From Octopus sinensis (lineage: Eukaryota), in contig NC_042998.1 in assembly GCF_006345805.1 (NCBI RefSeq), positions 195,610,001 through 195,674,000 on the forward strand: a stretch of DNA of 64,000 bases, in the 5' to 3' direction. Below the pieces are notes generated by a model, which was not told the origin of the DNA, made no database searches, and saw only the letters and a list, made by a program, of their open reading frames with translations. A program made the translations under genes and the position numbers. How positions within the stretch are numbered: the stretch's first letter is position 1; each line of letters begins with the position of its first letter. Positions 12,204 through 49,906 of the stretch are shown in pieces.

Positions 12204-12860
12204 GTGTCTGCTTATCTATCCATCTACTTATTATCTCTGTGTCTCACTTTATTTCTCTCTCTCTCTCTCTCTTTCTGTCTATCTATCTATCTCTCTGTCT
12301 GACTGTCTCTCTCTCTCGTTTATTTCCCCCTCCTTTCAGATATTCTCCTCCAAGCAGTAAACAATAACTCCTTAAAATATAAAAAAAAAGCAAAACAAAA
12401 GAAGAAAAAAAAACGAAGAATGCTCTGACATCAGAAGATAATGAAATATGTCTTTACGTCAGTTAAGATACGAAGACTATGCGGAAGGCAAAACAACAAC
12501 CACATCACCATCCAAATCAACAACGACAACTGCTGAAAGAGTCTGCAAAGCAAAAACATTTAACACCTACGGGAAAAAAAAAGCAGAAAACAGGTTTTAT
12601 GATAAACATATTACGTATATCGGTCAACGAAGTGTCTCCGCACTTTACGTAGCGACGAAATAACATCAAAGGAGTGAAAATACATTCTTAAGCGGTGACG
12701 AACTAAAGAAAATACTGTTTCGTTTTATGAAGAGATATTTGTTTCTTGTGGCTTTGAAACAAATTAACACCTACGCCGAATATGACGTAGTTGCTACCGA
12801 ATTAAGTGCTATACCTGTGAATCTCCGTCGATTTCGATGATGTGTCGTATCCAGTTGTTC

Positions 12861-13245
12861 GATCACCTGGACAAATTGCTTTAAGATGCCACGGTTGTGA
12901 AGTTCACACCTTAACCCAGTGGTTTGATCACCTGAACAAATTGCTTAAGATGCCACGGTTGTGAAGTTCACACCTTAACCCAGTGGTTTGATCACCTGAA
13001 CAAATTGCTTAAGATGCCACGGTTGTGAAGTTCACACCTTAACCCAGTGGTTTGATCACCTGAACAAATTGCTTAAGATGCCACGGTTGTGAAGTTCACA
13101 CCTTAACCCAGTGGTTTGATCACCTGAACAAATTGCTTAAGATGCCACGGTTGTGAAGTTCACACCTTAACCCAGTGGTTTGATCACCTGAACAAATTGC
13201 TTAAGATGCCACGGTTGTGAAGTTCACACCTTAACCCAGTGGTTT
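12861..13245. repeat. Minisatellite, 6 x 64 bp
   Basis: Unit GATCACCTGAACAAATTGCTTAAGATGCCACGGTTGTGAAGTTCACACCTTAACCCAGTGGTTT starts at 12861 (65-bp variant), 12926, 12990, 13054, 13118 and 13182; the last five are identical. Confidence 0.97.
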
Positions 13246-14190: not shown

Positions 14191-14610
14191 AAGGCGGCGA
14201 GCTGGCAGAAACGTTAGCACGCCGGTTGAAATGCGCAGCCGTATTTCGTCTGCCGCTACGTTCTGAGTTCAAATTCCACCGAGGTCGACTTTGCCTTTCA
14301 TCCTTTCGGGGTCGGTTAAATAAGTACCAGTTACGCACTGGGATCGATATAATCGACTTAATCCGTTTGTCTGTCCTTGTTTGTCCCCTTCTGTGTTTAG
14401 CCCCTTGTGGGCAGTAAAGAAATAGGTATTTCGCCTGCCGCTACGTTCTGAGTTCAAATTCCGCCGAGGTCGACTTTGCCTTTCATCCTTTCGGGGTCGA
14501 TAAATTAAGTACCAGTTACGCACTGGGATCGATATAATCGACTTAATCCGTTTGTCTGTGCTTGTTTGTCCCCTCTGTGTTTAACCCTTTGTGGGTAGTA
14601 AAGAAATATA
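14191..14610 (+). mobile_element. SINE family B dimer
   Basis: Head + body + body joined at GAAATAGGTATTTCG. Confidence 0.85.
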
Positions 14611-21033: not shown

Positions 21034-21441
21034 AAGGCGGCGAGCTGGAAGAAGCGTTAGCACGCCGGGCGAAATGCTTAGCGGCATTTCGTCTGCTGCT
21101 ACGTTCTGAGTTCAAATTCCGCCGAGGTAGACTTTGCCTTTCATCCTTTTCGGGGTCGATTAGATAAGTACCAGTTACGCACTGGGGTCGATGTAATCGA
21201 CTTAATCCGTTTGTCTCTCCTTGTTTGTCCTCTCTGTGTTTAGCCCCTTGTGGGTAGTAAAGAAATAGGTATTTCGTCTGAGTTCAAATTCCGTCGTGAT
21301 CAATTTTGCTTTTCATCGTTTCAGGGTCAATAAATTAAGTACCAGTTACGCACTGGGGTCGATATAATCGACTTAATCCGTTTGTCTGTCCTTGTTTGTC
21401 CCCTCTGTGTTTAGCCCCTTGTGGGTAGTAAAGAAATAGGT
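21034..21441 (+). mobile_element. SINE family B dimer
   Basis: Same head + body + body structure and junction. Confidence 0.85.
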
Positions 21442-21880
21442 AAGTTACTATTAAATCAACAGTTGTGTAGCATTTGTCAAGATTACATTGTTGATCTTGA
21501 TATGGAACGAAGTGAGACTAACATATTGATTAATAAGTTTTATTAATCGATTATTTTTTTCCTTTGAGTGTTTGATACACCATACGTATGCTAGATAGAG
21601 TCTCAAGCCAGTAGAAAAGCCCACTTGAGAGAACAGGTGCTGGCAGAACAATTTTGAAGTAACGTAGCCAAAAGTGCCCGTTCCAGAGGACAATAAACTT
21701 CAGAGCACCATCAGGTGGAAATTTAGACTTTTTTCTCGTGAAGTGTGGAGACTAGCAGACCTTAACTACAATCTGCCATACGGCTATTAGGACATATGCT
21801 TTATGGATACATTTGAAAACAGTGCAGTACACACCGGGGCGAAGGCCGGGTGACCACTTGTATGTATGTATGTATGTATG

Positions 21881-27418: not shown

Positions 27419-28377
27419 GTTTTTTCCTTTTTTTCTTCAAATTTTCTTCCGTTTCTCGCCGAGTGTTTTCCATACACATAGGACAGAGAAGCCCATTGTA
27501 TGCATTCCCAGATTACACACGCAGATTCACAGATAAAATATGTATTTAAAAATTAATAAATAAATAAATTCATGGATGAATGTTGTTTTCACAATGATAA
27601 TGCTCTTCTCAGTACATGAGCCGTTCCAGTTAACACGATTTTTTGCGCTTCCTGTAGGGATGGTAGGGATAGGTTTCAGTACCTTTTTTTATCATTCCTA
27701 GAGATCCTACAATCACTGGTACTGTAGTCGCCTTGAGATGCCACATTTTTTCAATTTCTATTAGCAGGTCTTTATATTTACTAATCTTGTCAAATTCTTT
27801 CGCCGCTATATTGTGATCGCAAGGGATACTCATGTCAATTAATAAACACATCTTTTTTTGTTTGATCTTTTATAATAATATCCGGTTTATTAGCTTTTAT
27901 AGTCTTGTCGGTCTGTACGGGGAAGTCCCATAGAATCGACACATTTTCTCCCTCAGTCACAGCTTCAGGGTGGTGTTTATACCATTTGTCAGCGGTTTTG
28001 ATTTTATAATACCGACATATTATCCAGTGTAAATACTGGCCGACTCTGTCATGTCTTGCTTTATATTCTGCAGGTGCTAAGATTCTACACCCTGAGATTA
28101 GGTGGTCTATTGTTTCAATCTCATCGTTACAGAATCGGCATTTGGGGTCAGCCCAATTTTTTATCACATTGGCTTGGTAGTTCCGGGTAAATAAGCTTTG
28201 GTCTTGAGCAGCTAATATGAAACCTTCACTCTCTGTTTTAAGCTCTGAGCTTCGTAACCATTGGTGTGTGTGTTTCTGGTCGACATCAGCTTGTTTGCTA
28301 CGGGCCACATACTTGCCATGGAGAGGTTTCTGTTCCCATCTGCTAGCTAAATTTAGCAAAATTTTCATGTACTTTTT
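27419..28377 (-). mobile_element. 5'-truncated R4/Dong-clade non-LTR retrotransposon (family A), RLE endonuclease C-terminus + 3'UTR
   Basis: RWEQKPLHGKY, CCHC knuckle CRFC..ETIDHLISGC, RHD, WDFPVQTD..NKPDIII, then after a frameshift CLLIDMSIP..KYKDL..MW..VIVGSLG, ending KIVLTGTAHVLRRALSL*. The 3'UTR runs directly into (TAA)n at 27418; (TAA)n also abuts the truncated 5' end. Confidence 0.88.
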
Positions 28378-28412
28378 ATTATTATTATCATTATTATTAT
28401 TATTATTATTAC

Positions 28413-28478
<66 letters not shown>

Positions 28479-28497
28479 CATTATTATTATTATTATT

Positions 28498-29520
28498 CAG
28501 TAGACTTATTTTTATCAAGTGCTTTCACTGCGCTATTGAGTGCAGCTCTGTGTGCCTTGGATATGTACAGTGGTTTGTTGTGGTGCTCTTATTTTCACTG
28601 TATTGAAAGTGTTTTGCGTAGGATGTGTGCAGTGCCTAGTAGTGTTATATATACTTGTAAGTCCTGGTGTTTTTGTTATGTATTTGTTTGAAAGTTTTTT
28701 TTTATCATGCCTAATGTGCCTACTATGATAGGAATTGTTTCTGCTTTTAGACTCCGCATTCGAGTAACCTCTTTTCCTAGATCTTTGTGTTTTGAACGTT
28801 TCTCCGTTTCTTTTAGAGAAACACTGTCATCTGTTGGTATCGATACATCGATTAGAAAGCATTGTTACCTTGGTGGTCTCTGACATCTATATCCGGCCTT
28901 TTGGCCTAAATTTCTCTGACTGTGTGTATTGCAGAGGTGGTTCTAGGTCATCAGCATCACTCGGACTCATCACAGATTTTGCATCAGACACATCTAGAGT
29001 CCAGTTAAGAATATTGTAGCTGTAACTTATAACTGGGACGGCTAGTGAGTTGATACCTATTATCTTGTTTTTCGCACTGAGCTCTGTTTTCAATATTAAT
29101 CTGACTCATCTATAGTATTCCTTTTTTATATCTTCTCTTTCAACTGTGTGTGTTGTATCGTATCTAGTTCATTGATTCCTAAGTATTTGTATATCTGGCT
29201 TTGGTCTAATTCTCTTCTTTCATTTGCTATTCTTTTTATCTACTGTTATGTTGCTACTAGTTTTCCTCTTTTCAGGTTGCTTTGGCGCATTTTTCTAAGC
29301 CAAATTTCATGTTTATTTCTTTGGTAAATCCATGTACTGTCTGTAGCAATGTTTCCATCTGTTTATTATTTGTAGCGTACAGTTCTAGGTCATCCAAATA
29401 CAAGAGATGGGCGATTTTTTTGCCGTAACAGTTGTATTCACACCCAGTTCTGTTTAGCATGTCGGATAAAGATGTCAGTGCCAAGCAGAAATAGAGTGGG
29501 GAGAGCATGTCTCCTCGGAA
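28498..29520 (-). mobile_element. 5'-truncated, internally deleted R4/Dong-clade LINE (family B): RT fragment fused to RLE C-terminus + 3'UTR
   Basis: RT motifs FRGDMLSPLYFCL, HLLYLDDLELY, MKFGLEKCA, YKYLGINE, NKIIGINSLAVPVISYS; jump near 28990 to the EI.A.RPDI.VRDH..FLIDVSIPTD..LLGTAHILRKTLSIQ* region. Flanked on both sides by (TAA)n. Confidence 0.82.
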
Positions 29521-29563
<43 letters not shown>

Positions 29564-29899
29564 GAGTGAGAGAGCAGTGCATGCCATCAAAGTGACACTG
29601 GGGTAAAATATACGAAGCCCAATATACCCATCATGACTACCCGTCTGATAAGGGTACACCAGGCACATGCATCACAACCATATGTGCGCGACATGGTGAT
29701 CTCATATCAAGATAAACAGCACATGACCTTGCAGGTGGGGCCCAGTTAGAATTTTCTTCAGGTTGAGTAGCCCATCCCGCTCAAAAGGTCCCTGATTAAG
29801 GGTTGTTTAAGGATGTTGAAAGAACCACCCATGTTTCCAGAGGTGAATTATTCAAACCCCAAAGAATCCCCCTCAACACATGGCTATGATGCTCCCCCA
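29564..29899 (-). mobile_element. Element X copy 2 (truncated, 336 bp)
   Basis: Keeps the GAGTGAGAG end, stops at GATGCTCCCCCA; (TTA)n on both sides. Confidence 0.8.
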
Positions 29900-29916
29900 T
29901 TATTATTATTATTATT

Positions 29917-30579
<663 letters not shown>

Positions 30580-32466: not shown

Positions 32467-33865
32467 TCAGGTCATCCCATAAGTTCTGTCCGAATTTTGA
32501 ATAAGGAAAACAAGTGATCAAATGTTATATTTAATTGAAATTTAATCATCAATGTAATTTGCCTGCTTATCTGTGACTTCCTTCCATCTATTTACAAGCT
32601 TTTTAATCCCATCAATGTAAAACTCTTTTGGTTTCAAAGCGAAGATCTCTGAAATATCAGTTTCGACCTCCTCCTGGCTTGCGAAAGTTATGTCCCCTAA
32701 ATGATTCTGTAAACTACGAAACAAATGGTAGTCTGAAGGAGCAAGGACTGGAGAATAAGGTGGATGAGGAATTTTTTCCGCCGAGATCAACTTTAACTTT
32801 CTTCCTTCCGGATTCGGAAAAAGAAAGAACCAGTCAAGAACTGGGTCAAACCTCTTCCTCTACATAACTTCTGTAGCCTTATGCCTCTATGAAGAAGATC
32901 TTCTGTAATGTGATCTTTGCAGTGTGGGGTCGCGCATTGTCCTGATGAAACATCACTGCTTTTCGATTCACTAAAGCGGGTCTTTTTTTTTTCTTCAAAG
33001 CTTGGTTCAAACGCTCTAATTGCTGACAGTAGACTTGAGCATTGATTGTTGTATTAGGTGGTAACAATTCAAGGTGAATTACTCCTTTGCAATCCCACCA
33101 GATAGAGAGAAGAACTTTTTTTTTCCATGAAATTCCCTTCTCGGTTGTGGTTGAGCTTTTCCCCTTTTACCAAGCCACTTTTTACGACGTTTAACATTTC
33201 AATAGAAGATCCATCTTTCGTCATCAGTCACAAGTCTATCCAAAAAGGTTGAAATGAGTTCGCGAGAATGGAGAGAAGAGTAAATGCCAACTCGGGATTT
33301 GCGGTTGCTTTCAGACAATTCATGAGGCACACATTTTCCAAGTTTAGGAACCTTTCCAAGTTGTTGAAGATGATGTTGAACAGTTGTATGGTTTGAACTA
33401 AGCTTTATTGCCAATTCTTCAACTGATAATGCAGGATTTTCTTCAAGCAATGCCTCAAAGAGCTTATCATCAAACTCAAATGGACGTCCTGTTTGATCTT
33501 CATCTTCAAGGCTGAAATCTCCACTTCTGAATTTTGCAAACCATTTTCTGCAAGTTCTTTCATTCAAGCATTCTTTCTCATAAACTGAGTGTATATCTCA
33601 AGTCGCTTCGACTGTAGAGTTTCCTTTTTTGTACTCATAAAGCATTATGTGCCTTAAATGCTCTTTGGATACTTGCATGTTAGAAAGGGTTTTAATCAAA
33701 GAAATTTTAATTCTATTATTCTGTAAAATAATATCTAATTAGTTTAAATGTACACAAATGCATAAAAATAATTTTTAATTCCATTAGACATTCTAAAATA
33801 CTTTTAAATTTCATCCAATTTAAAAAAAAAAGGTAAAATCGGACAGAACTTATGGGATGACCTGA
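32467..33865 (-). mobile_element. Full-length, inactivated mariner (Tc1/mariner, D,D34D type) DNA transposon
   Basis: Perfect 27-bp TIRs TCAGGTCATCCCATAAGTTCTGTCCGA (32467-32493 and 33839-33865) flanked by TA on both sides; transposase motifs inside. Confidence 0.95.
32542..33678 (-). pseudogene. Mariner transposase pseudogene
   Basis: Begins MQVSKEHLRHIMLYEYKKG; HTH region WFAKFRSGDFSLEDEDQTGRP; CVPHEL (WVPHEL-like), VTDDERWIFY, HQDNARPH, PHPPYSPVLAPSDYHLF. Broken by TGA at 33598-33600 and 33199-33201, a frameshift in the A9 run near 33120, and an insertion at 32776-32898. Confidence 0.93.
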
Positions 33866-35100: not shown

Positions 35101-35199
35101 TACATACATACATACATACATACAATAATACATATACATGGATGAAGAAACGGTATTTTTGAAGATTAAGTAGGAAAAGGAGAAAATGGCAGAAGTTAT

Positions 35200-35337
35200 T
35201 TGCGTACGAAGTTCAAAAAGTTCAGATGCGCGTGCGCAAACATAAACAGACGCGCGCACAGACACACGATAGTTAAGTAAATAATATTATTTGCGCGGGA
35301 ACTGCAAGCACATGCATTTTACTGGTATTGTGTAAAT
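35200..35337 (+). promoter_or_regulatory. Putative promoter/5'UTR of the CCP-SRCR gene
   Basis: Local CpG cluster with TGCGCGTGCGCA (35227-35238, NRF1-like palindrome) and a 7-codon uORF at 35312-35335 just upstream of the ATG. Position-based inference only. Confidence 0.3.
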
Positions 35338-37266
35338 ATGGCAGGAGAACTTCTGGTTTTGTTAATTGCCATTTCTGTAGACTTTAGCCAGGCTGGAATA
35401 ACAAATCATTCGTTTGGAAGACACAGTTTTGAAAATGATAAGAATTTCAATGATCCAACATTAAAAGAAAAGAGTACCGGGGGAGAAATATTGAACACCA
35501 TTGAGACTACGATTTATGGAGGGAATCACCCAGGAGGAGACATTGACGAGGAAAATATTCGTAGCAGCAATGAAGGAGAACAGAATAAAATGGAAATAGC
35601 ATCAGGCGAATCAGCAACAGTTCCAGAATATACCAAATATATGAACGAAGGCAGTGGAGATCAATACTCGAATCAGTCCTACACAGTTTTCCAAGATAAA
35701 TCTTTACAAATTAGTTTACAACCATTTCATGGATCGGTGAGCGTTAATTACACTTTTCTGAAAGAGAAACCAGAGCTTATTCAGTGCCATGTAATTAGCA
35801 GACGAAACGAGCGATTCATTGAAACTTTAATGAGTTTAATCAACTGCGGACATTTCCCGGAAATACCAAACGGAAAATTTGTTTTTGCACTCGGTCATTC
35901 TCCGGATGATATTATTTCAAGAGTTTTATGTGACCGCTATTATATTCGTGTAGGAGAGGCTAACGGTGATCTTCGCTGTCGGAAAGGAGTTTGGTACCAT
36001 AACGCCACATGTGAAATTGTGAAATGTTTAAGAAAACTCCAAGTGCCCTCCAATGGTCGGAAAGTATCGAAAACTGGGAATACAGTCAATTCTACAATAA
36101 CGTTTTCTTGTCAGTATGGTTACAAGTTGTTTGGAAACAAAACCTTGGTGTGTGGCGAAGATGGAAACTGGATGGGTACGTTCCCTTCTTGTCAATTAGT
36201 GAAATGTCCCAAACCTCAGCTGCCAGATCATGGATTTATTGAAAAAGATAAACAGGAAACCGTTTTCAATACGACACTTGTCTATCGATGTAGGGAAGGA
36301 TATAGTCTTGTTGGTTCATCGCATATCACGTGTCAAGCTGACGGAAAGTGGAACAGAGAGTTTCCTGTTTGTAAACAAGTTTGCTTGATTCCAGATATAA
36401 AAGGACTAACGAAGCCGTTGTGGTTATTACCAACCTTTAAAGCATTGAATACTTCAGCGGAGATATCTTATGGACAGCAAATAATTTACTCATGCAAAAA
36501 ACGTTTCAAAAATGCCTATGAAGGAGCTATTACATGCATTAATGGAATTTGGGTCCCAGCTATATTTTGCATCAGGTCTTCTGCATGTGTGGAACCGAAA
36601 ACACCAAAGCATGCAATAATTGTCTATCAAATTGGTAGGGCCTTTGTACAGTATGATTGCAAGAAAGGCTATCAGATATCGAACACAGATCTCCGAATTT
36701 GTTCTCGCAGACGCACATGGTCTCATCCAGTTCCAGAATGCGTGAAATCTTGTGAGCTTCCTAAAATCTTTGGAATGAAAGATGCAGAATTCGACTTCAA
36801 ATACAATAAGACTAAAACTAGGTCTTTATATGAAATTTTCCTGACGTATTCCTGTAAAAACGATTTCAGAAAACCAAAAGAAATTCAACCTAAATGTCTT
36901 AATGCAACTTGGAATCCATTGCCACGGTGTGTTCCGGCTAATGTTAGACTCAGCTATACGTTTGGTGAAACCATCGGAGTTGCAGAAATCTTCAGTGATG
37001 GCACTTGGGGAGGTGTCTGCGATCATTTTTACGTTGGTGTTGGCAGATGGGGTAAATCCGAATCAAAAGTATTTTGCCGAATGCTAGGTTTCAAAAACGG
37101 CCAAAAGTTAAGATCCTACAGTTCTTCAGGAGTTCGAGCCAAATTCATGGGTATTGCGTGTTCTGGCGATGAAGAAAGCATCCTACAGTGCCGAACTAAA
37201 CAAGCAAATGTGTTTTGTACAGACTTAGTGGTTGTTTCATGCCGGGGATATATTTTCCCTGAATAA
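35338..37266 (+). CDS. Intronless secreted protein: signal peptide + acidic N-terminal region + 6 CCP/sushi domains + C-terminal SRCR (group A, 6-Cys) domain, 642 aa
   Basis: Uninterrupted 1929-bp non-repetitive ORF. In-frame upstream stop TAA at 35278-35280; start context AAT-ATG-G. Hydrophobic N-terminus MAGELLVLLIAISVDFSQA. Six C..C..C..W..C modules at aa 170-225, 230-285, 290-345, 349-411, 417-468 and 472-531 (e.g. CPKPQLPDHG..YRCREGYSLVGSSHITCQADGKWNREFPVC). SRCR at aa 536-635 (VRL..G.AEIFSDGTWGGVCD..W..SESKVFCRMLGF..IACSGDEESILQC..C..VVVSC). Ten N-X-S/T sequons; no transmembrane segment. Confidence 0.92.
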   Translation: MAGELLVLLIAISVDFSQAGITNHSFGRHSFENDKNFNDPTLKEKSTGGEILNTIETTIYGGNHPGGDIDEENIRSSNEGEQNKMEIASGESATVPEYTKYMNEGSGDQYSNQSYTVFQDKSLQISLQPFHGSVSVNYTFLKEKPELIQCHVISRRNERFIETLMSLINCGHFPEIPNGKFVFALGHSPDDIISRVLCDRYYIRVGEANGDLRCRKGVWYHNATCEIVKCLRKLQVPSNGRKVSKTGNTVNSTITFSCQYGYKLFGNKTLVCGEDGNWMGTFPSCQLVKCPKPQLPDHGFIEKDKQETVFNTTLVYRCREGYSLVGSSHITCQADGKWNREFPVCKQVCLIPDIKGLTKPLWLLPTFKALNTSAEISYGQQIIYSCKKRFKNAYEGAITCINGIWVPAIFCIRSSACVEPKTPKHAIIVYQIGRAFVQYDCKKGYQISNTDLRICSRRRTWSHPVPECVKSCELPKIFGMKDAEFDFKYNKTKTRSLYEIFLTYSCKNDFRKPKEIQPKCLNATWNPLPRCVPANVRLSYTFGETIGVAEIFSDGTWGGVCDHFYVGVGRWGKSESKVFCRMLGFKNGQKLRSYSSSGVRAKFMGIACSGDEESILQCRTKQANVFCTDLVVVSCRGYIFPE

Positions 37267-37499
37267 CTTTTTAAAGAAACATTTAGTTCTGATGAAAAGT
37301 CTTAATTAATGTTCCACTTGCAGGAATGAAAATATTTCCTCCAAAATCTCTGTTTCGCTTTCATTACACAGGTATATCTTCTTTCATATTAAATTTTATT
37401 CTTATTTCTGAGTTACTGTTATTTCCATGATTAAAACGATCCCTTTGAGACTAAATGCAGACTGTTAGCTTCATTAAAGGTCCTATAACTTGTAAATGC

Positions 37500-37505
37500 A
37501 ATAAA
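37500..37505 (+). promoter_or_regulatory. Candidate polyadenylation signal for the CCP-SRCR gene
   Basis: AATAAA about 235 nt after the stop codon; ATTAAA variants also occur between 37385 and 37480. Such hexamers are frequent by chance in AT-rich DNA. Confidence 0.3.
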
Positions 37506-39428: not shown

Positions 39429-40108
39429 ACTACTTTTAATTGAGCAGATCTATAAACGAAAGGCGTTCCAACCATCTTTTTCTAGCTGGTCGAAATGACG
39501 TATGGATTTTCTGCATTTGCTCGTGATTTGAGGAAAATTTGGCTGCTACTTCAAGCAAATTCAAATTTACAGCGTTGTCTAAACACACACACACAGACAG
39601 ACACACACACACACTAGTAAGGGAGGTAACTGTGACCTTACTATTTCTGTCAATACATTACCCTTACTACGCTACAATAAGTTTGAAAGCAATCTTCTAG
39701 TGGTTGCGCATTCTACTTGAAATAGCAGCCAAATCCTTAAATTGCACACCATCGTCTTTCAAACAAACGAAAGCCACACAGGAAAAAGTACTCTTCGGAA
39801 AATATAACGGGAAAATCGTGTTTGGAACGTCTTCGATGAAATGTCTGCTTTATCGGAAGTGATTTGTAGCTAAACAGCAGCAATGGCAACAACAATAACA
39901 AACAACCAATAAACAAGCAAACAAACAAAGAACAACAACAACAACAACAATAACATGTGAAAGCTATTATCTTAGTTTATATCTGGTTGAGATATCTCCG
40001 AGACTCAAGATGTCTGAGGCAAGCGTCTCGTTTTGTCTCCAGTAATTCTGTGTTAAAACCCGTTCACACATTCTTAGTCGTTAACAACTGTTAATAATCT
40101 GGAGGGAG

Positions 40109-40670
40109 TATGTATGTATGTATGTATGTATGTATGTATGTATGTATTATGTATGTATGTATGTATTTATGTATGTATGTATTGTATGTATGTATGTATG
40201 TATGTTGTATGTATGTATGTATGTATGTATGTATGTATGTATGCATGTATTTATGCATGTATGTGTGTGTGTATGTATGTATGTTCGTATGTATGTATGT
40301 TCGTAATTATGTATGTATGTATGTATGTTGTATGTATGTATGTATGTATGTTTGTATGTAATGTATGTATGTATGTATGTATGTATGTTTGTATGTATGT
40401 ATGTATGTATGTATGTATGTATGTATGTATGTATGTGGTGTGTGTATGTATGTATGTATGTATGTATGTATGTATGTATGTATGTATGTATGTATGTATG
40501 TGTATGTATGTATGTATGTATGTATGTATGTATGTATGTATGTATGTATGTATGTATGCATGTATGTATGCATGTATGTGTGTGTGTATGTATGTATGTT
40601 CGTATGTATGTATGTTCGTATGTATGTATGTATGTGTGTGTGTATGTATGTATGTATGTATGTATGTATG

Positions 40671-40704
<34 letters not shown>

Positions 40705-41422
40705 TGTATATATGTATGTATGCATGTATGTGTTTGTGTGTGTATGTATGTATGTATGTATGTATGTATGTGTTTGTGTGTGTATGTATGTATGTATATA
40801 TGTATGTATGTATTGTTTGTGTGTGTATGTATGTATGTATGTATGTATTTATGTATGTATGCATGTATGTATGTATGTATGTATGTATGTATGAATGTAT
40901 GTATGTATTTATGTATGTATGTATGTATGTATGTATGTGTGTATGTATGTATGTATGTATGTATGTATGTATGTATGTATGTATGTATGTGTGTGTGTGT
41001 ATGTATGTATGTATGTATGTTTGTATGTGTGCATGCATGTATGTATGTATGTATGTATGTATGTATGTATGTAGTATGTGTATGTGTGTATGTATGTGTG
41101 CATGCATGTATGTATGAATGTATGTATGTGTGCATGCATGTATGTATGTATGTATGTATGTATGAATGTATGTGTGTATGTATGTATGAATGTATGTATG
41201 TATGAATGTATGTATGTATGTATGTATGTATGTATGTATGTATGTATGTTTGTATGTGTGTATGTATGTATGTATGCATGCATGTATGTATGTATGTATG
41301 TATGTGTGCATGCATGCATGTATGTGTGTATGTATGTGTGCATGCATGTATGTATGTATGTATGTATGTATGTATGTATGTATGTATGTATGTATGTATG
41401 TATGTATGTATGTATGTATGTA
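40109..41422. repeat. (ATGT)n microsatellite, about 1.3 kb
   Basis: Direct reading. Confidence 0.98.
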
Positions 41423-42219
41423 TTACGGACTCTCCTGGCATCAGACGACTTATGAGGGTTCGACAATTTCTTGCCGAACAACCTCACAGATGATTTGTTT
41501 ATAGCGATCAAATGTTTGTGTAGACATAAGTTCACTCCCTCCATCAAACCGACATTACCTGTACAGGTGCACCGTGTGCCACATGTTACATGACGAAATG
41601 ATCGCAGAAATGAAGCGCTTTGCTCAAGAACACAACGCAACGCTCGGTCTGGGAATCGAACCCACGATCTCGCAATCGTGAGTGCAACACCCTAACCACT
41701 AAGCCATGCACCTTAGTATATATGCATGCGCGCGCGCACGCGTGTGTGTGTGTGCATCCATCGAAATTGCAAAGTTAATCTGGAACTCGACTGAGGATAG
41801 AAAACTCCGAATGATCCGTCCTTGTTTTCCTTGTATCGTCTGTCTGGATATTTTGTTTTCCTTTTTTTTCTTTCACCTAACTGTCTGGATGTTTTTTGCG
41901 TTCTTTTCCCATTTTGTATTTTGAAACAGTATTTCATGATTTCGTTACGCTAGCGCCTGCCATACGAGCACCAACAATTTGATCTCTTTGAAAGTACGAT
42001 AGATCTGTCATTTTAATGAATTTTAATTACCTTTTTCTGATGATATCTGAAAAGAAACATCAATTTTAGCAAAACATATTAAGCAACACTAATAATAAAT
42101 AAAAAAACATAAAAATAAACAAGCTTTATACAGTGTTATAGATATTTCAAAATTATGATGATATGATAATATGATGCTAGGTGTTTCCAATATTTTGTCC
42201 GACCCCTTAATACACACAC

Positions 42220-42296: not shown

Positions 42297-42972
42297 CACC
42301 AAACACACACGCGCGCGCAGTGAGTCGATCAGGTAAACGAAAGGAGGTAACACACAATACAAAATTCTCATTTCTTTTTTAATCGAAGAACAGAAAAGTT
42401 CCTCAACTCTGTTATGGTTGACACATTTACATTTGTATTTCGTATTATATTTAAACACTATATGTCTATAATTTCAGTTTGTCTGTTACACATCATAAAA
42501 ATACAGTTTTATTTTTTGCTTTACTCTTAGCTATCTCATAAAACACATCATAATGTTAATGCGCACCGTTTGGGAGTGACTTATATTATTCTCTACACAC
42601 AGCGTCAATTTTCTACACGACTACTTATATTGTATGTCTACAAGCGTTTAATGGGAGATAATTCTTTTAAGATCTTACAAAGTAATCTCCCTTCGTTTTT
42701 GTTTTTAGATACTCCATTATAAAATTCTTATTTTTATTTTGATACAAAAATTTGTAGGTCCTCATGATTCGTTTTTGTGTTTTTCAGGTTAAATATTTCG
42801 ATTATATCTTTCATTTCATTCCAGAGATAAGTTTTTTTAGAATGGCATAATGGAACATATTGTGACAAGTAGAATGATTGTAGATTGGCAACTGACTTGA
42901 TTAAAGATCGCATGTTCCAACAAACTTAACAATCAGCGAAGCAAACGAGTGAGCGAAGAAACGAATTAGTAT

Positions 42973-44058
42973 ACACACACACATACATACATACATAAAT
43001 ACATACATACATACATACATACATACATACATACATACATACATGCATGCATGCATACATACATACATACATACATAAATACATACATACATACATACAT
43101 ACATACATACATACATACATACATACATACATGCATGCATGCATACATACATACATACATACATACATAAATACATACATACATACATACATACATACAT
43201 ACATACATACATACATACATACATGCATGCATGCATACATACATACATACATACATACATAATACATACATACATACATACATACATACATACATACATA
43301 CTACATACATACATGCATGCATACATACATACATACATACATACATAAATACATACATACATACATACATACATACACACATACATACATACATGCATAC
43401 ATACATACATACATACATACATAGATACGTACGTACGTACATACAAACATACATACATACATACATACATACATACATGCATACATACATACATACATAC
43501 ATACATACATAGATACGTACGTACGTACATACAAACATACATACATACATACATACATACATACATACATACATAAATACATACATACATACATACATAA
43601 ATACATACATACATACATACATACATACATACATTCATACATACATACATACATAAATACATACATATATACATACATACAATACAAACACACATACATA
43701 CATACAAACATACATACATACCATACATACATACATACATACATACATACATACATACATACATACATACATACATCCACACACACCACATACATACATA
43801 CTACATACATACTACACACACACATACATACATACTACATACATACATACATACATACATACATACATACATACATACAGACAGCCACACACACACACAC
43901 ATACATACATACATACATACATACATACATACATACATACATACATACATACATACATCCATACCACACACACACATACATACATAACTACATACATACA
44001 TACATATCATACATACATACATACATACGACATACATACATACATAATACAATACATA
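42973..44058. repeat. (ACAT)n microsatellite, about 1.1 kb (opposite orientation to 40109-41422)
   Basis: Direct reading. Confidence 0.98.
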
Positions 44059-44059
44059 C

Positions 44060-45547
44060 ATGGTCCACTAATATCGCTAGACTAAAAACCTTCACCTCAA
44101 GCTCCGACAAAGCAGCAGTAGAATGACTTTTCAAATTTATGGATAAATTTTTCCTGTCGCAACTCGTCCATGAAATAACCAAAATCAACCAAAGTGTATT
44201 GGACCCAGTGCTAAGCAATCATCCTAACACTATCCATAACAGCACAGTAGAAAGAACTCTCCAGTCCGTTCGCCACATAGTACTCTGCAACCTCAATCTG
44301 CAGCATCAAAAAATTTGGCATAAACAACTTTGACAGAGTCGACCACAAAATACTGTTAAGGAAACCATCTAACGCTGGAGTCGGTGGTAAGCTACTTCAA
44401 TGGATTAAATATTTCCTATTTCCTAACAAACAGGACCCAGCATGTTGTGGTTGATGATATCCACTCAAGACCAGCGAAAGTCATCAGCGGAGTCCCGCAG
44501 AGCACTGTGCTGGGTCCACTTTTTTTTTATTGTCTGTGTCAATGACATTGTAGATTCCATTGAACATAGCAACATTAAAATATTTGTAGATGACTCTAAG
44601 TTTCAGAAAGTCATTAAAGGAGCATATGATAGAGCGATGCTTCAATTGGACCTATGCGTAGTAACCCAGTGGATACGGAAAAGCAATCCGAGGCTGAATG
44701 AAGAAAAATTTAAGCTCATCCACTTTGAAAAAGACGGCACACTCAAACAACCATGTACACTGTCGTCGGTAGACCTACTTGAATATCAGAGACTTAGTTG
44801 TAACTGTCTACAGCAACCTTAGCTGGTGTGTACACATTAACAAAAAAGTTGATGTTGCCCGCAGAATGTGCTCATGGATACTCAGAACATTTCAAACTAG
44901 GAACCATGAAGCCATCATCCTTCTCTTCTCCACATTCGCTAGGCCCTACCTCCAATACTGCTGCCCTTTGTGGTCCCCCTACAAAAACCAAGACATAATG
45001 AGGATCGAAGCGCCACAAAGATCAATCACTACAAAAATAAATGGCATAGTGGGACTTAATTATTGAACTCGACTTAAACAGCTGAAACTCTATTCGCTGC
45101 AACGCCGTTGTGAACGATACATTATTTGCATCATGTGGGAAATATTCCACCAATATTATCCAAATGATATCGATATAATGTTTAAAATTTACCCAAGACT
45201 AGGCCCCCGTGCAATACGTCCCCTACAAAAGTCGAGATCACATCACGTAAGAGCATTCCGGCACAATTTCTTCACAGCAAATGGTCCTGCTCTTTTCAAT
45301 GTTGCCCCGAAAGAAATAAAAGTAGAATAAGACCCTCACAACTTTCAAACGGTACCTGAACAAAATCCTCCAGGAAATACCGGACAAGCCACCTACACCT
45401 CGATACGTCTCAGCCAACAACAACTCTCTGCTTGAGTGGTCCATGATGTTCCCAAATAATTAACTAAAAGACTTTTACAGGTGGTGCTATTGAGTTAGTC
45501 ATGGCCTGAGCCGAAATGGCCGAAACCAATCTAAGTTATCTAAGTTT

Positions 45548-48825: not shown

Positions 48826-49906
48826 TAATTCATCGACCTCGAAAGGATGAAAGGCAAAGTCGACCTCGGCGGAATTTGAACTCAGAATGTAGTAGCAGAC
48901 GAAATACCTATTTCTTTATTACCCACAAGGGGCTAAACACAGAGCGGACAAACAAGGACAAACATAGGTATTAAGTCGATTACATCGACTCCAGTGCGTA
49001 ACTGTTACTTAATTTATCGACCCCGAAAGGATGAAAGGCAAAGTCGACCTCGGCGGAATTTGAACTCACAACGTAACGGCAGACGAAATACCGCTAAGCA
49101 TTTCGCCCGGCGTGCTAACGTTTCTGCCAGCTCGCCGCCCCGCAGACGAAATACCTATTTCTTTACTACCCACAAGGGGCTAAAAACAGAGAGGACAAAC
49201 AAGGACAGACAAACGGATTAAGTCGATTACATCGACCCCAGTGTGTAACTGGTACTTAATTCTTGACCCCGAAAGAACGAAAGGTAAAGTCGACCTCGGC
49301 AGAATTTGAACTCAAGAACATAGCGATGAAATTCCTATTACTTTATTGCCCACAGGGGCTAAACACAGAGGGGATAAACAAGGACAGACAAATGGATTAA
49401 GTCGATTATATCAATCCCAGTACGTAACTGGTACTTATTTAATCTACCCCGAAAGGATGAAAGGCAAAGTCGACCTCGGGGATATTTGAACTCAGAACGT
49501 AGTGGCAAATGAAATACCTATTTCTTTACTACCCACAAGGGGCTAAAAACAGAGAGGACAAAAAAAGGACAGACAAACGGATTAAGTCGATTACATCAAC
49601 CCAGTGTGTAACTGGTACTTAATTTATCAACCCCGAAAGGATGAAAGGTAAAGTCAACCTCGGTGGAATTTGAACTCACAACATAACGGCAGACGAAATG
49701 CCTATTTCTTTACTACTCACAAGGGGCTAAACACAGTGGGAACAAACAAGGACAGACAAACGGATTAAGTCGATTATATCGACTCCAGTACGTAACTGGT
49801 ACTTATTTGATCGACCCCGAAAGGATGAAAGGCAAAGTCGACCTCGGCGGAATTTGAACTCAGAACGTAGCGACGGGCAAAATACCGCTAAGCATTTCGC
49901 CCGGCG
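48826..49906 (-). mobile_element. SINE family B multimeric array (five full bodies + one partial)
   Basis: Repeating units of roughly 185 bp, each beginning (plus strand) GAAATACCTATTTCTTT or a variant; heads at 49081-49140 and 49880-49906. Confidence 0.85.

What the first reader, a model, noticed from the sequence alone, without database searches (positions are those of the whole stretch)
35338..37266. Intronless secreted 6xCCP + SRCR protein alone in a sea of repeats
Seen: seven disulfide-rich modules in a single open 1.9-kb frame, with all domain cysteines intact, no transmembrane anchor and no other recognisable host exon in the window. Established: animal CCP and SRCR modules are usually encoded by separate exons; CCP arrays typify complement regulators and SRCR domains typify pattern-recognition proteins. 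I do not recognise this exact architecture as a named gene. Inference: an old retrogene or lineage-specific gene kept under selection, a candidate soluble complement-control/pattern-recognition or extracellular-matrix protein of cephalopods.
Basis: partly seen in the sequence, partly recalled or inferred. Interest (0 to 1): 0.7.

Follow-up and report, generated by a model that had tools for sequence, protein, structure and literature searches.

The report
Secreted CCP–SRCR gene of cephalopods
This is a real, selectively maintained octopus gene whose whole coding part sits in one exon and encodes a secreted protein of six complement-control-type modules plus one scavenger-receptor module; it is already in the databases under a misleading name, its function is untested, and it is a modestly interesting lineage-restricted member of a familiar kind of mosaic protein.

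Summary
Window 35338-37266(+) (Octopus sinensis chr CM016860.1) is a 642-codon ORF. It encodes a signal peptide, a fast-evolving acidic region, a conserved ~55-aa segment with one unpaired invariant Cys, six CCP/Sushi modules (CCP1 divergent) and a C-terminal 6-Cys SRCR domain. There is no TM segment, and the rest of the window shows only transposon debris and simple repeats.

Full-length orthologues with an uninterrupted CDS exist in O. vulgaris, O. bimaculoides, a third Octopus, Argonauta (64% aa) and a distant unnamed clade (39% aa). Against Argonauta only the CDS still aligns. dN/dS is 0.1-0.35 on most branches, so the gene is functional.

"Intronless" is true only of the CDS. In the distant clade, RNA-type contigs splice from a GTAAGT donor 45 nt after the stop. 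No retrogene hallmark (parent gene, poly(A) remnant) was found.

NCBI calls the gene "SVEP1(-like)", a misnomer, and an SRCR survey catalogues it as Obi004. Nobody has characterised it. The SRCR lacks the canonical cation-binding residues, which weakens a DMBT1/MARCO-type recognition model.

Best reading: a soluble, probably disulfide-linked, extracellular binding protein, most likely humoral. Function is inferred only. It is a new member of a known kind, of modest interest.

The parts
35130..35337 (+). Putative promoter / 5' UTR block directly upstream of the ATG
   Evidence: This block is 92.3% identical to O. bimaculoides and 99.5% to O. vulgaris. More distal upstream flank is 84-86% and 94%. 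It is conserved in three Octopus species. An in-frame stop lies at 35278-35280. TSS not determined.
35338..37266 (+). Complete CDS (642 codons + TAA) in a single exon
   Evidence: The gene range equals the CDS in four annotated genomes. Start and stop positions are conserved in all orthologues.
35338..35397 (+). Signal peptide (aa 1-20, MAGELLVLLIAISVDFSQA|G)
   Evidence: It is the only KD-19 window above 1.6. It is conserved in Argonauta, and the distant clade has its own signal peptide, MGRKFAFYLMLIFLMVQNG. The cleavage site is inferred from the -3/-1 rule.
35398..35679 (+). Variable acidic N-terminal region (aa 21-114), probably disordered and glycosylated
   Evidence: Residues 21-149 are S/E/N/G/T-rich with net charge -10. 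dN/dS for aa 21-114 is 0.4-1.7, and 7 of the 11 O. sinensis/O. vulgaris substitutions lie here. No Pfam or PDB match.
35680..35844 (+). Family-specific pre-CCP segment (aa 115-169) with the invariant unpaired Cys150 (codon 35785-35787) and an amphipathic stretch NERFIETLMSLIN
   Evidence: Conserved down to the 39%-identity clade. dN/dS is 0.09-0.28 on longer branches. A profile of it matches nothing outside the family.
35845..36021 (+). CCP1 (aa 170-228), divergent
   Evidence: 4 Cys + Trp219. No Pfam hit alone. In-register profile matches to CCP arrays exceed shuffled controls.
36022..36201 (+). CCP2 (aa 229-288)
   Evidence: Pfam Sushi 7.5e-12.
36202..36381 (+). CCP3 (aa 289-348)
   Evidence: Pfam Sushi 1e-16 over the full model. 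It gives the best matches to CR1/CR2/factor H modules.
36382..36579 (+). CCP4 (aa 349-414), long first loop
   Evidence: Pfam Sushi 4.7e-4 at 21.0 bits. Its profile hits 131 of 203 CCP-array proteins.
36580..36750 (+). CCP5 (aa 415-471)
   Evidence: Pfam Sushi 3e-7.
36751..36939 (+). CCP6 (aa 472-534)
   Evidence: Pfam Sushi 2e-3 at 18.9 bits, just under the cut-off. Its profile hits 160 of 203 CCP-array proteins.
36940..37263 (+). C-terminal SRCR domain (aa 535-642), 6 Cys (group-A pattern), non-canonical ligand site (CDH, no DD, ED deleted)
   Evidence: Pfam SRCR 6e-12. PDB relatives are PIT54, CD163, MARCO and SCARA5. Residue mapping against PMC7043408.
37267..37510 (+). Putative 3' UTR with a candidate donor CAG|GTATAT (GT at 37372-37373) and AATAAA at 37500-37505
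   Evidence: This stretch is 94.3% identical to O. bimaculoides and 98.0% to O. vulgaris, above the distal flank. The motifs are conserved in three Octopus species. No A-run follows. Use of these signals is not shown.

Best explanation
This is a functional protein-coding gene restricted to cephalopod-type genomes, with its entire CDS in one exon.

The product enters the secretory pathway, loses a 20-aa signal peptide and is released, because it has no membrane anchor. The mature ~70-kDa glycoprotein has four parts:
- a fast-evolving acidic tail that is probably disordered;
- a conserved ~55-aa segment whose single unpaired cysteine (Cys150) most likely forms an inter-chain disulfide, giving a dimer or oligomer;
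- a semi-rigid rod of six CCP modules;
- a terminal SRCR head.

I think it acts as a soluble extracellular binding or bridging protein. Most probably it is a humoral factor of haemolymph or mucus that binds protein ligands through CCP2-3 and the SRCR, as an opsonin-like or regulator-like molecule. It probably does not work through the Ca2+-bridged polyanion mechanism of DMBT1/MARCO.

Shown: ORF, modules, secretion signals, conservation, selection, single-exon CDS, and transcription with a 3'-UTR intron in the distant clade.

Inferred: oligomerisation, soluble binding role, immune context.
For: - Architecture and cysteine registry.
- Signal peptide and no TM segment.
- Orthologues of 87%, 83%, 64% and 39% aa identity keep every module, Cys150 and the start and stop positions.
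- Against Argonauta only the CDS is still alignable within +-10 kb.
- dN/dS for the folded part is 0.09 (O. sinensis/O. vulgaris, p=1e-4), 0.35 (third Octopus, p=9e-9) and 0.18 (Argonauta, p=1e-32). The N-terminal region is far freer.
- RNA-type contigs in two species of the distant clade carry the whole ORF.
- The odd cysteine count (31, all invariant) implies a free or inter-chain Cys.
- 10-11 N-glycosylation sequons per orthologue.
- The moderate, not strong, constraint resembles humoral or recognition proteins more than core neural or matrix proteins (inference).
- Cephalopods have C3-like and other complement-pathway homologues: PMC4199593.
Against: - No expression or binding data exist for any octopus. 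No RNA-derived contig of the Octopus clade is in the 90% cluster; only gene models and WGS contigs are.
- The O. sinensis/O. bimaculoides pair gives omega 0.69 for the folded part, not significantly below 1 (p=0.1).
- The SRCR lacks five of the six canonical cation-site residues. This removes the best-understood SRCR recognition mechanism.
- CCP arrays also serve synaptic, matrix and gamete functions.
- The structure prediction failed (pLDDT 32), so disorder and oligomerisation are sequence-based guesses.
Confidence: 0.55

Rival explanations
1. Origin rival: the gene is an ancient processed retrogene. A spliced mRNA of a multi-exon CCP/SRCR gene was reverse-transcribed and inserted in a coleoid ancestor, then acquired a promoter and later a UTR intron.
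For: The CDS of seven modules is uninterrupted in every taxon seen. In vertebrates CCP modules are typically one per exon (established knowledge). The locus is isolated among LINE and mariner debris.
Against: - No parent or close paralogue in annotated octopus proteomes or in the exhaustive search.
- No poly(A) remnant or A-run after any poly(A) signal.
- No paralogous fragments nearby.
- A 3'-UTR intron exists in the distant clade, and there is an acceptor-like site before the Argonauta ATG.
- SRCR domains are single-exon in some invertebrate lineages anyway (PMC10855680).
- Target-site duplications were not searched for, and would in any case have decayed at this age.
Confidence: 0.25
2. It is a true complement regulator (RCA-like). 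It would bind the C3b-like fragment of cephalopod C3 and accelerate convertase decay or act as a cofactor, like factor H, C4BP or DAF.
For: Best sequence matches of CCP2-3 are to CR1, CR2, factor H, beta2-GPI, MCP, DAF and poxviral CCP proteins. It is soluble and consists mostly of CCPs. C3 homologues exist in squid and octopus. An oligomerising Cys segment recalls C4BP (my own knowledge).
Against: - The similarity is generic CCP similarity (23-33% identity). Equally good or better hits are CSMD/SVEP1-type non-complement proteins.
- No RCA protein carries an SRCR.
- No functional residues can be read from sequence.
- No data exist.
Confidence: 0.15
3. It is an extracellular-matrix or synaptic organiser, like the secreted CCP proteins LEV-9 (C. 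elegans), Hikaru genki (Drosophila) or SRPX2. It would cluster receptors or shape matrix in the large cephalopod nervous system.
For: Secreted CCP-array proteins of invertebrates have such roles (established knowledge). 'lev-9-like' and 'Hikaru genki' proteins appear among weak hits.
Against: It evolves much faster than typical synaptic organisers: 64% aa identity between Octopus and Argonauta, omega 0.2-0.4. It has no WAP or Ig module. The hits are generic CCP matches.
Confidence: 0.12
4. It is a reproductive or gamete-recognition protein of the egg coat, sperm or accessory glands. Mammalian ZP3R/sp56 (CCP) and the sea-urchin speract receptor (SRCR) are precedents.
For: - Evolution is relatively fast, with a very fast N-terminal region.
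- No Octopus RNA-derived contig appears in the 90% cluster, which contains only gene models and WGS contigs. This suggests restricted expression (weak evidence).
- The gene has a single coding exon.
- 'Zona pellucida sperm-binding protein 3 receptor-like' is among weak hits.
Against: No positive selection was detected (omega below 1 on all branches). No expression data exist. The hits are again generic CCP similarity.
Confidence: 0.12
5. It is not an independent functional gene. It would be either a decaying ORF or pseudogene, or one exon of a larger SVEP1-like gene as the NCBI name suggests.
For: The NCBI product name is 'SVEP1(-like)'. One pairwise omega is not significantly below 1.
Against: - The ORF is intact in at least 7 taxa, with saturated synonymous divergence.
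- Omega is well below 1 on most branches.
- The signal peptide sits at residue 1 and the stop position is conserved.
- Full ORFs with UTRs occur on RNA-type contigs.
- There are no VWA, EGF, HYR or pentraxin domains.
- There are no further CCP or SRCR exons within +-10 kb.
Confidence: 0.02

Closest known systems
SVEP1 / polydom (the name NCBI gives the octopus models)
   Same: Contains CCP modules. Secreted.
   Different: SVEP1 is ~3,500 aa with VWA, HYR, EGF, pentraxin and ~34 CCP modules and no SRCR (my own knowledge). This protein has 642 aa, 6 CCPs and 1 SRCR, and none of the other domains. The name is a best-hit artefact.
Regulators of complement activation: factor H, CR1/CR2, C4BP, DAF, MCP; also beta2-glycoprotein I
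   Same: Strings of CCP modules. Soluble members exist. They are the best PDB sequence matches for CCP2-3. A Cys-containing oligomerisation segment is conceivable, as in C4BP.
   Different: Identity is only 23-33%. None has an SRCR. They are vertebrate families. C3b/C4b binding is untested here.
Sponge (Geodia cydonium) putative aggregation receptor: SRCR domains + short consensus repeats (Blumbach et al. 1998, cited in PMC4557014)
   Same: Combines SRCR and CCP/SCR modules in one extracellular protein. An adhesion or recognition role is proposed.
   Different: The sponge protein is membrane-inserted and, from memory, has many SRCR domains. It is not orthologous. Here there is a single SRCR and the protein is soluble.
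Echinoderm SRCR-superfamily mosaics with Sushi repeats
   Same: SRCR + Sushi is a frequent combination. There are 38 such genes in S. purpuratus, and Sushi is the top partner domain in A. planci (PMC10855680). SRCR domains there are single-exon.
   Different: Those are large, tandemly expanded families. This is a single-copy gene with a fixed 6+1 layout and family-specific N-terminal segments.
Group-A SRCR proteins (MARCO, SCARA5, Mac-2BP, LOXL2) and DMBT1/SALSA
   Same: The SRCR fold signature, the 6-Cys pattern and the beta1 motif 'AEIFxxxxW' resemble VEVLxxxxW (motif from my own knowledge).
   Different: The cation-binding cluster needed for SALSA/MARCO ligand binding (D1019, D1020, E1086, D1058, D1059, N1081; PMC7043408) is reduced to the first Asp. 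The motif is an invariant CDH, DD is replaced, and ED is deleted.
Secreted invertebrate CCP proteins LEV-9 and Hikaru genki; poxviral complement-control proteins
   Same: Short soluble CCP arrays. The viral ones are intron-free.
   Different: They have no SRCR and no shared N-terminal segment. The locus shows no viral context, composition like its flanks (GC 0.39 against 0.36) and a conserved position between Octopus species.

Membership tests
CCP/Sushi-module proteins (Pfam PF00084) | ~60-aa module with 4 Cys (1-3, 2-4) and an invariant Trp between Cys3 and Cys4 | tested here: met
   Six modules have this registry, and all Cys and Trp are invariant in six sequences. Pfam is significant for CCP2-5, marginal for CCP6 and absent for CCP1. 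Family profiles of CCP1, CCP4 and CCP6 hit CCP arrays above shuffled controls.
SRCR superfamily, group A | ~100-110-aa SRCR domain with six conserved cysteines | tested here: met
   Pfam SRCR 6e-12. Six invariant Cys. The group definition is from PMC10855680.
SRCR proteins that bind ligands by the SALSA/MARCO mechanism | Acidic cation-binding sites 2 and 3 (equivalents of D1019, D1020, E1086, D1058, D1059, N1081) | tested here: not met
   Only the D1019 equivalent (D562) is kept. D1020 is replaced by an invariant His563. The DD of 'WLDD' is replaced by M/T/Q-G/S. The 'ED' is deleted, and the loop is 2 residues shorter. This rests on the HMMER alignment to PIT54 SRCRs, the six-sequence alignment and the site definition. 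The mapping is by sequence alignment only.
SVEP1 / polydom | VWA, HYR, EGF/EGF-Ca and pentraxin domains with ~34 CCPs | tested here: not met
   Pfam finds only Sushi and SRCR. Length is 642 aa.
Regulators of complement activation (RCA) | Protein built of CCP modules only (with or without an anchor or oligomerisation tail) | tested here: not met
   A C-terminal SRCR and a 150-aa non-CCP N-terminus are present.
Regulators of complement activation (RCA) | Binds C3b/C4b; decay-accelerating or factor-I cofactor activity | not testable with these tools
   Needs biochemistry. Only generic CCP similarity is seen.
Processed retrogene | Intron-containing parent gene elsewhere in the genome or in outgroups | tested here: inconclusive
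   No close paralogue in the word-indexed or exhaustive searches. Remote homologues below ~350 bits would be hidden under multi-CCP giants. Genome-wide tblastn of cephalopod assemblies was not possible.
Processed retrogene | Poly(A) tract remnant and no introns at all | tested here: not met
   No A-run of 8 or more within 1 kb downstream, and no A-rich stretch after any poly(A) signal. A 3'-UTR intron is present in distant orthologues. Old age could have erased or added these features. Target-site duplications were not searched for.
Secreted (non-membrane) protein | N-terminal signal peptide, no TM segment, no GPI-type hydrophobic tail | tested here: met
   The Kyte-Doolittle scan shows a single hydrophobic window at residues 1-20. 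The C-terminus ...SCRGYIFPE is hydrophilic. No dedicated predictor (SignalP) was available.

The most novel reading that the evidence does not exclude
The gene encodes a coleoid-specific humoral immune factor: a disulfide-linked dimer whose CCP rod binds or regulates the cephalopod C3/TEP system. Its atypical SRCR head carries an invariant Cys-Asp-His motif in place of the Ca2+ site and would recognise a ligand by a new, non-canonical (possibly transition-metal- or protein-dependent) mode. That would make it a lineage-specific invention of a factor-H/C4BP-like regulator or opsonin, born as a single-exon gene.
Probability: 0.2. Interest if true: 0.55.

Novelty: new member of a known kind. Interest (0 to 1): 0.3.

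Why it matters
Cephalopod innate immunity and extracellular biology are poorly charted. A single-copy, conserved, secreted CCP-SRCR protein found only in this lineage is a tractable candidate for a haemolymph or mucus recognition or regulatory factor. Three further points have practical value:
- The database name (SVEP1) is misleading and will propagate.
- 'Intronless' ORFs should be checked for UTR introns before being called retrogenes.
- This SRCR domain has systematically lost the cation site that is claimed to be universal for the fold, which makes it a useful natural test case for that claim.

None of this overturns current ideas. The architecture class is familiar.

Tried and rejected
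1. AlphaFold2 on the three-sequence alignment gave mean pLDDT 32. The model is unusable, so no fold search was run.
2. A word-indexed search with the CCP6+SRCR alignment returned nothing, not even the family itself. It is uninformative.
3. A profile of the pre-CCP segment plus CCP1 against PDB gave only chance-level hits (E of 0.28 or more). I did not pursue them.
4. The Logan contigs L005-L007 and L004 first looked like transcripts. Their ends lie in microsatellites or SINEs, so they are WGS contigs.
5. I tried to name the species and tissues behind runs ERR3431203, ERR12408771, ERR12370320/1, ERR12921337, ERR12374249, SRR9970004, SRR7369732 and SRR11869384/90/91. Literature searches failed. 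The only lead is that the neighbouring accession ERR3431204 is Mytilus coruscus from a Ningbo University group. 'Decapodiform, perhaps cuttlefish' remains a guess.
6. No expression values for Obi004 are held in the supplements of PMC10855680.
7. No paper cites the protein accessions.
8. Viral or horizontal origin is rejected. The locus is collinear with O. bimaculoides over ~24 kb, has composition like its flanks, and shows only TE fragments nearby.
9. Tandem paralogues or a pseudogene copy nearby are rejected by tblastn.
Full report
WHERE WE ARE. The window is Octopus sinensis assembly GCA_006345805.1, chromosome CM016860.1, bases 195,600,001-195,664,000. The exact protein of the ORF is recorded there at 195,635,338-195,637,266. 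The window is AT-rich (GC 0.29-0.47). It is packed with microsatellites, SINE-like ~185-nt units and tandem duplications.

THE OBSERVATION. The ORF at 35338-37266(+) is real: 642 codons from ATG to TAA. With the window's base composition the chance of 642 stop-free codons is about 3e-19.

Pfam reports Sushi (E=8e-40, five stretches) and SRCR (E=4e-10) and nothing else significant. Taken one at a time:
- CCP2-CCP5 are significant (7.5e-12, 1e-16, 4.7e-4, 3e-7).
- CCP6 is marginal (18.9 bits against a cut-off of 20.7).
- CCP1 is not detected.
- The SRCR scores 6e-12.

CCP1 aligns in register (Cys1-Cys4 and the Trp) and gives 8 hits at E<1e-3. CCP4 gives 131 and CCP6 gives 160. Column-shuffled profiles give 0 in 15 trials. 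So there are six CCPs, the first of them divergent.

The protein has 31 cysteines: 24 in the CCPs, 6 in the SRCR (the group-A pattern) and one extra at position 150. All 31 are invariant in six sequences. The only hydrophobic segment is the N-terminal MAGELLVLLIAISVDFSQA, and the C-terminus is hydrophilic. There are 10-11 N-glycosylation sequons per orthologue.

NOTHING ELSE IN THE WINDOW. Ninety non-low-complexity stop-to-stop segments from the rest of the window matched only transposon domains:
- RVT_1 at 29278-29514(-)
- zf-RVT at 28081-28284(-)
- mariner Transposase_1 at 32981-33166(-)
- HTH_48 at 33517-33597(-)

No Rfam family reaches threshold. tblastn with the protein finds no second copy or fragment in the window or in +-10 kb of the O. 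bimaculoides and Argonauta loci. The deposited gene calls show no other gene within +-10 kb in four genomes. For a genome as gene-poor and repeat-rich as an octopus's this isolation is ordinary (my own knowledge).

RELATIVES. The word-indexed search found O. bimaculoides XP_014773468.1 (86-87% aa) and an Argonauta protein (64%). Everything else was a generic CCP array at 23-33% identity. The cluster look-up added O. vulgaris CAI9716996.1 (11 differences from O. sinensis) and a third Octopus species from WGS runs (83%).

The exhaustive HMMER search of 1.84 billion representatives returned 8,419 hits, but only two were single-stretch, full-length matches. One was the octopod cluster. The other was P0076 (544 bits, query 119-639).

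P0076 represents 14 sequences from unannotated run assemblies. It is 39% identical to all octopod proteins. It still keeps the signal peptide (after correcting the start by 10 codons), the pre-CCP segment with its Cys, all six CCPs and the SRCR. I could not name the taxon. By distance and flanking (TA)n repeats I guess a decapodiform cephalopod, and there are three congeneric species ~95-97% identical in DNA.

None of the ~200 CCP-array proteins retrieved carries this SRCR, the pre-CCP segment or the N-terminal region. Remote orthologues scoring below ~350 bits would be hidden under multi-CCP giants. 'Cephalopod-restricted' therefore means 'nothing else seen', not 'proven absent'.

IS IT A LIVING GENE? 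Yes.

The window and the O. bimaculoides locus are collinear for ~24 kb with 84-92% non-coding identity. Against Argonauta only the CDS (35332-37241) is still alignable.

Nei-Gojobori counts, with a binomial test of omega<1, give for the folded part (aa 115-642):

| Comparison | omega | p |
|---|---|---|
| O. sinensis / O. vulgaris (3 nonsynonymous, 9 synonymous changes) | 0.09 | 1e-4 |
| vs the third Octopus | 0.35 | 9e-9 |
| vs Argonauta | 0.18 | 1e-32 |
| vs O. bimaculoides | 0.69 | 0.1 (not significant) |

Against the distant clade, synonymous sites are saturated. The N-terminal region (aa 21-114) evolves much faster (omega 0.4-1.7), and 7 of the 11 O. sinensis/O. vulgaris substitutions lie there. 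The 208 nt before the ATG and the 244 nt after the stop are more conserved between Octopus species than distal flanks are, as expected of promoter or UTR sequence.

INTRONLESS? Only the CDS.

In every genome or WGS contig the ORF is uninterrupted. The signal peptide at residue 1 and the conserved stop leave no room for further coding exons.

In the distant clade I found contigs that do not end in repeats and behave as mRNAs: L008, L009 and L015. L009 is 99.8% identical to the same-species genomic contig L014, and L015 is 99.8% identical to L010. In both pairs the match ends at the same base, 45 nt after the stop. There the genome reads TGA|GTAAGTAA, a consensus 5' splice site, and the RNA continues with unrelated sequence. 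So the family is transcribed and has a 3'-UTR intron. The downstream exons differ between the two species. The 5' UTR is collinear with the genome for at least 245 nt.

For Octopus itself I have no RNA evidence. A CAG|GTATAT site 105 nt after the stop and an AATAAA at 37500 are conserved in three Octopus species. Argonauta has a polypyrimidine tract plus CAG 4 nt before its ATG. These are leads, not findings.

RETROGENE? Unproven. I found no parent or close paralogue. No poly(A) remnant or A-run follows any poly(A) signal. No fragments lie nearby. A UTR intron exists in the distant clade. I did not search for target-site duplications. Age could have erased or added all of these features, so I give retroposition about 0.25. 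Single-exon SRCR domains are normal in some invertebrates, and the 'one module, one exon' rule is mainly a vertebrate one.

WHAT DOES IT DO? Nothing is known experimentally. The gene is listed as Obi004 among 20 O. bimaculoides SRCR-superfamily genes, but no expression value is held and no paper cites its accessions. I reason from anatomy.

1. It is secreted and glycosylated.
2. The odd, invariant Cys150 lies in a conserved segment next to an amphipathic stretch (NERFIETLMSLIN). This predicts an inter-chain disulfide, that is a covalent dimer or oligomer (inference).
3. Six CCPs make an elongated protein-binding rod. CCP2-3 are the most canonical and best conserved.
4. The SRCR is a normal fold by sequence; its best PDB relatives are PIT54, CD163, MARCO and SCARA5. 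It lacks the cation-binding cluster that mediates ligand binding in SALSA/DMBT1 and MARCO and is said to be conserved across the superfamily (PMC7043408).
   - The D-D after the first Cys is an invariant D-H.
   - The 'DD' of WLDD is M/T/Q-G/S.
   - The 'ED' before the last Cys is deleted.
   - All three changes hold across the whole family. A Ca2+-bridged polyanion or microbe-binding mechanism is therefore unlikely, and the head probably binds a specific protein or uses another chemistry.
5. The rate of evolution (omega 0.2-0.4, with a hyper-variable tail) fits humoral or recognition or reproductive proteins better than synaptic organisers.
6. Cephalopods have C3-like and other complement-pathway homologues, so a complement-related role is possible but not indicated by anything specific.

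My best reading is a soluble, probably disulfide-linked binding or bridging protein of haemolymph or mucus (confidence 0.55 for the whole statement). The structural and evolutionary parts are solid. The physiological context is a guess. Rivals are a strict complement regulator (0.15), a matrix or synaptic organiser (0.12) and a reproductive protein (0.12). A pseudogene or an exon of a larger gene is essentially excluded (0.02).

COMPARISON WITH THE KNOWN. It is not SVEP1, since it has no VWA, EGF, HYR or pentraxin domain and only 6 CCPs rather than ~34. It fails the 'CCP-only' definition of RCA proteins. It meets the CCP and group-A SRCR definitions. It does not meet the canonical SRCR cation-site definition.

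SRCR+CCP mosaics are known from sponges (the aggregation receptor) and are common in echinoderms. The kind is therefore familiar. This particular single-copy 6+1 layout, with its own N-terminal segments, is an undescribed family.

VERDICT. The finding is a new member of a known kind, already present in databases as an uncharacterised and mis-named model. Interest is 0.3.

Noticed in passing
L001:10001-10024 (O. bimaculoides) vs window 35314-35337: The O. bimaculoides RefSeq model starts at a species-specific upstream ATG (MHFTALCN-), adding 8 codons. The ATG conserved in the other Octopus species and Argonauta is the MAGELL/MAVGFL one. In O. sinensis the upstream frame is closed by a stop at 35278-35280.
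   Followed up: yes
L004:679-705 and cluster members P0076/P0163/P0167-P0174: Automatic gene calls of the distant clade start 10-15 codons too late and lose the signal peptide. The in-frame upstream ATG gives MGRKFAFYLMLIFLMVQNG.
   Followed up: yes
L009:2340-2568, L008:2201-2408 vs L015:2241-2571: The 3'-UTR exons spliced to the common GTAAGT donor are unrelated in sequence between two species that are ~96% identical in exon 1. This could be alternative terminal exons, rapid UTR turnover or assembly chimeras.
   Followed up: partly
L002 ~9975-9996 (Argonauta): A run of T's followed by ATTCCTCAG lies 4 nt before the start codon. It is a textbook 3' splice-acceptor look-alike, hinting at a 5'-UTR intron in Argonauta. 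The Octopus species have no equivalent there.
   Followed up: no
cluster members P0164 (412 aa) and P0165 (261 aa), contigs of 2,864 nt: In some runs of the distant clade the ORF is called as two pieces on a full-length contig. This is a frameshift or nonsense allele, or a sequencing error, in that sample.
   Followed up: no
window 32545-33597 (-): A degenerate mariner/Mos1-type transposase (HTH_48 + Transposase_1 DDE) is split over three reading-frame fragments 1.7-2.8 kb upstream of the gene. The surrounding DNA is shared with O. bimaculoides, so it is an old insertion.
   Followed up: partly
window 27838-29586 (-): Fragments of a non-LTR retrotransposon ORF2 (RVT_1, zf-RVT) are interrupted by (TTA)n/(AAT)n runs. 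A 353-nt unit is tandemly duplicated at 29546-30252.
   Followed up: no
window 40108-41423 and 42971-44061: Two ~1.1-1.3-kb tetranucleotide arrays, (GTAT)n and its complement (ATAC)n, face each other as an inverted pair around a 1.5-kb spacer 3-7 kb downstream of the gene. They produce strong opposite GC and AT skews.
   Followed up: no
window 7197-7632, 14241-14608, 21105-21442, 49142-49870 and about 15 further sites: A ~170-230-nt SINE-like element (core ...GGTCGATAAAATAAGTACCAGTTACGCACTGGGGTCGAT...) is scattered on both strands, sometimes as tandem dimers or tetramers. All copies hit one element at L001:20045-20246. No tRNA or Rfam family reaches threshold.
   Followed up: partly
window 12851-13245: A 64-nt unit is repeated 6.2 times at 98% identity. 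It is a young minisatellite of unknown origin.
   Followed up: no
window 36940-37263 (SRCR), residues 562-563: Cys-Asp-His is invariant across about 39%-identity divergence at the place where SRCR domains normally have Cys-Asp-Asp, a Ca2+ ligand pair. A conserved His at a former metal site might indicate a different metal or a protein contact.
   Followed up: partly
search tool behaviour: The word-indexed protein search with a 5-sequence CCP6+SRCR alignment returned no hit at all, not even the family's own database entries. A negative from that tool with short alignments should not be read as absence.
   Followed up: no
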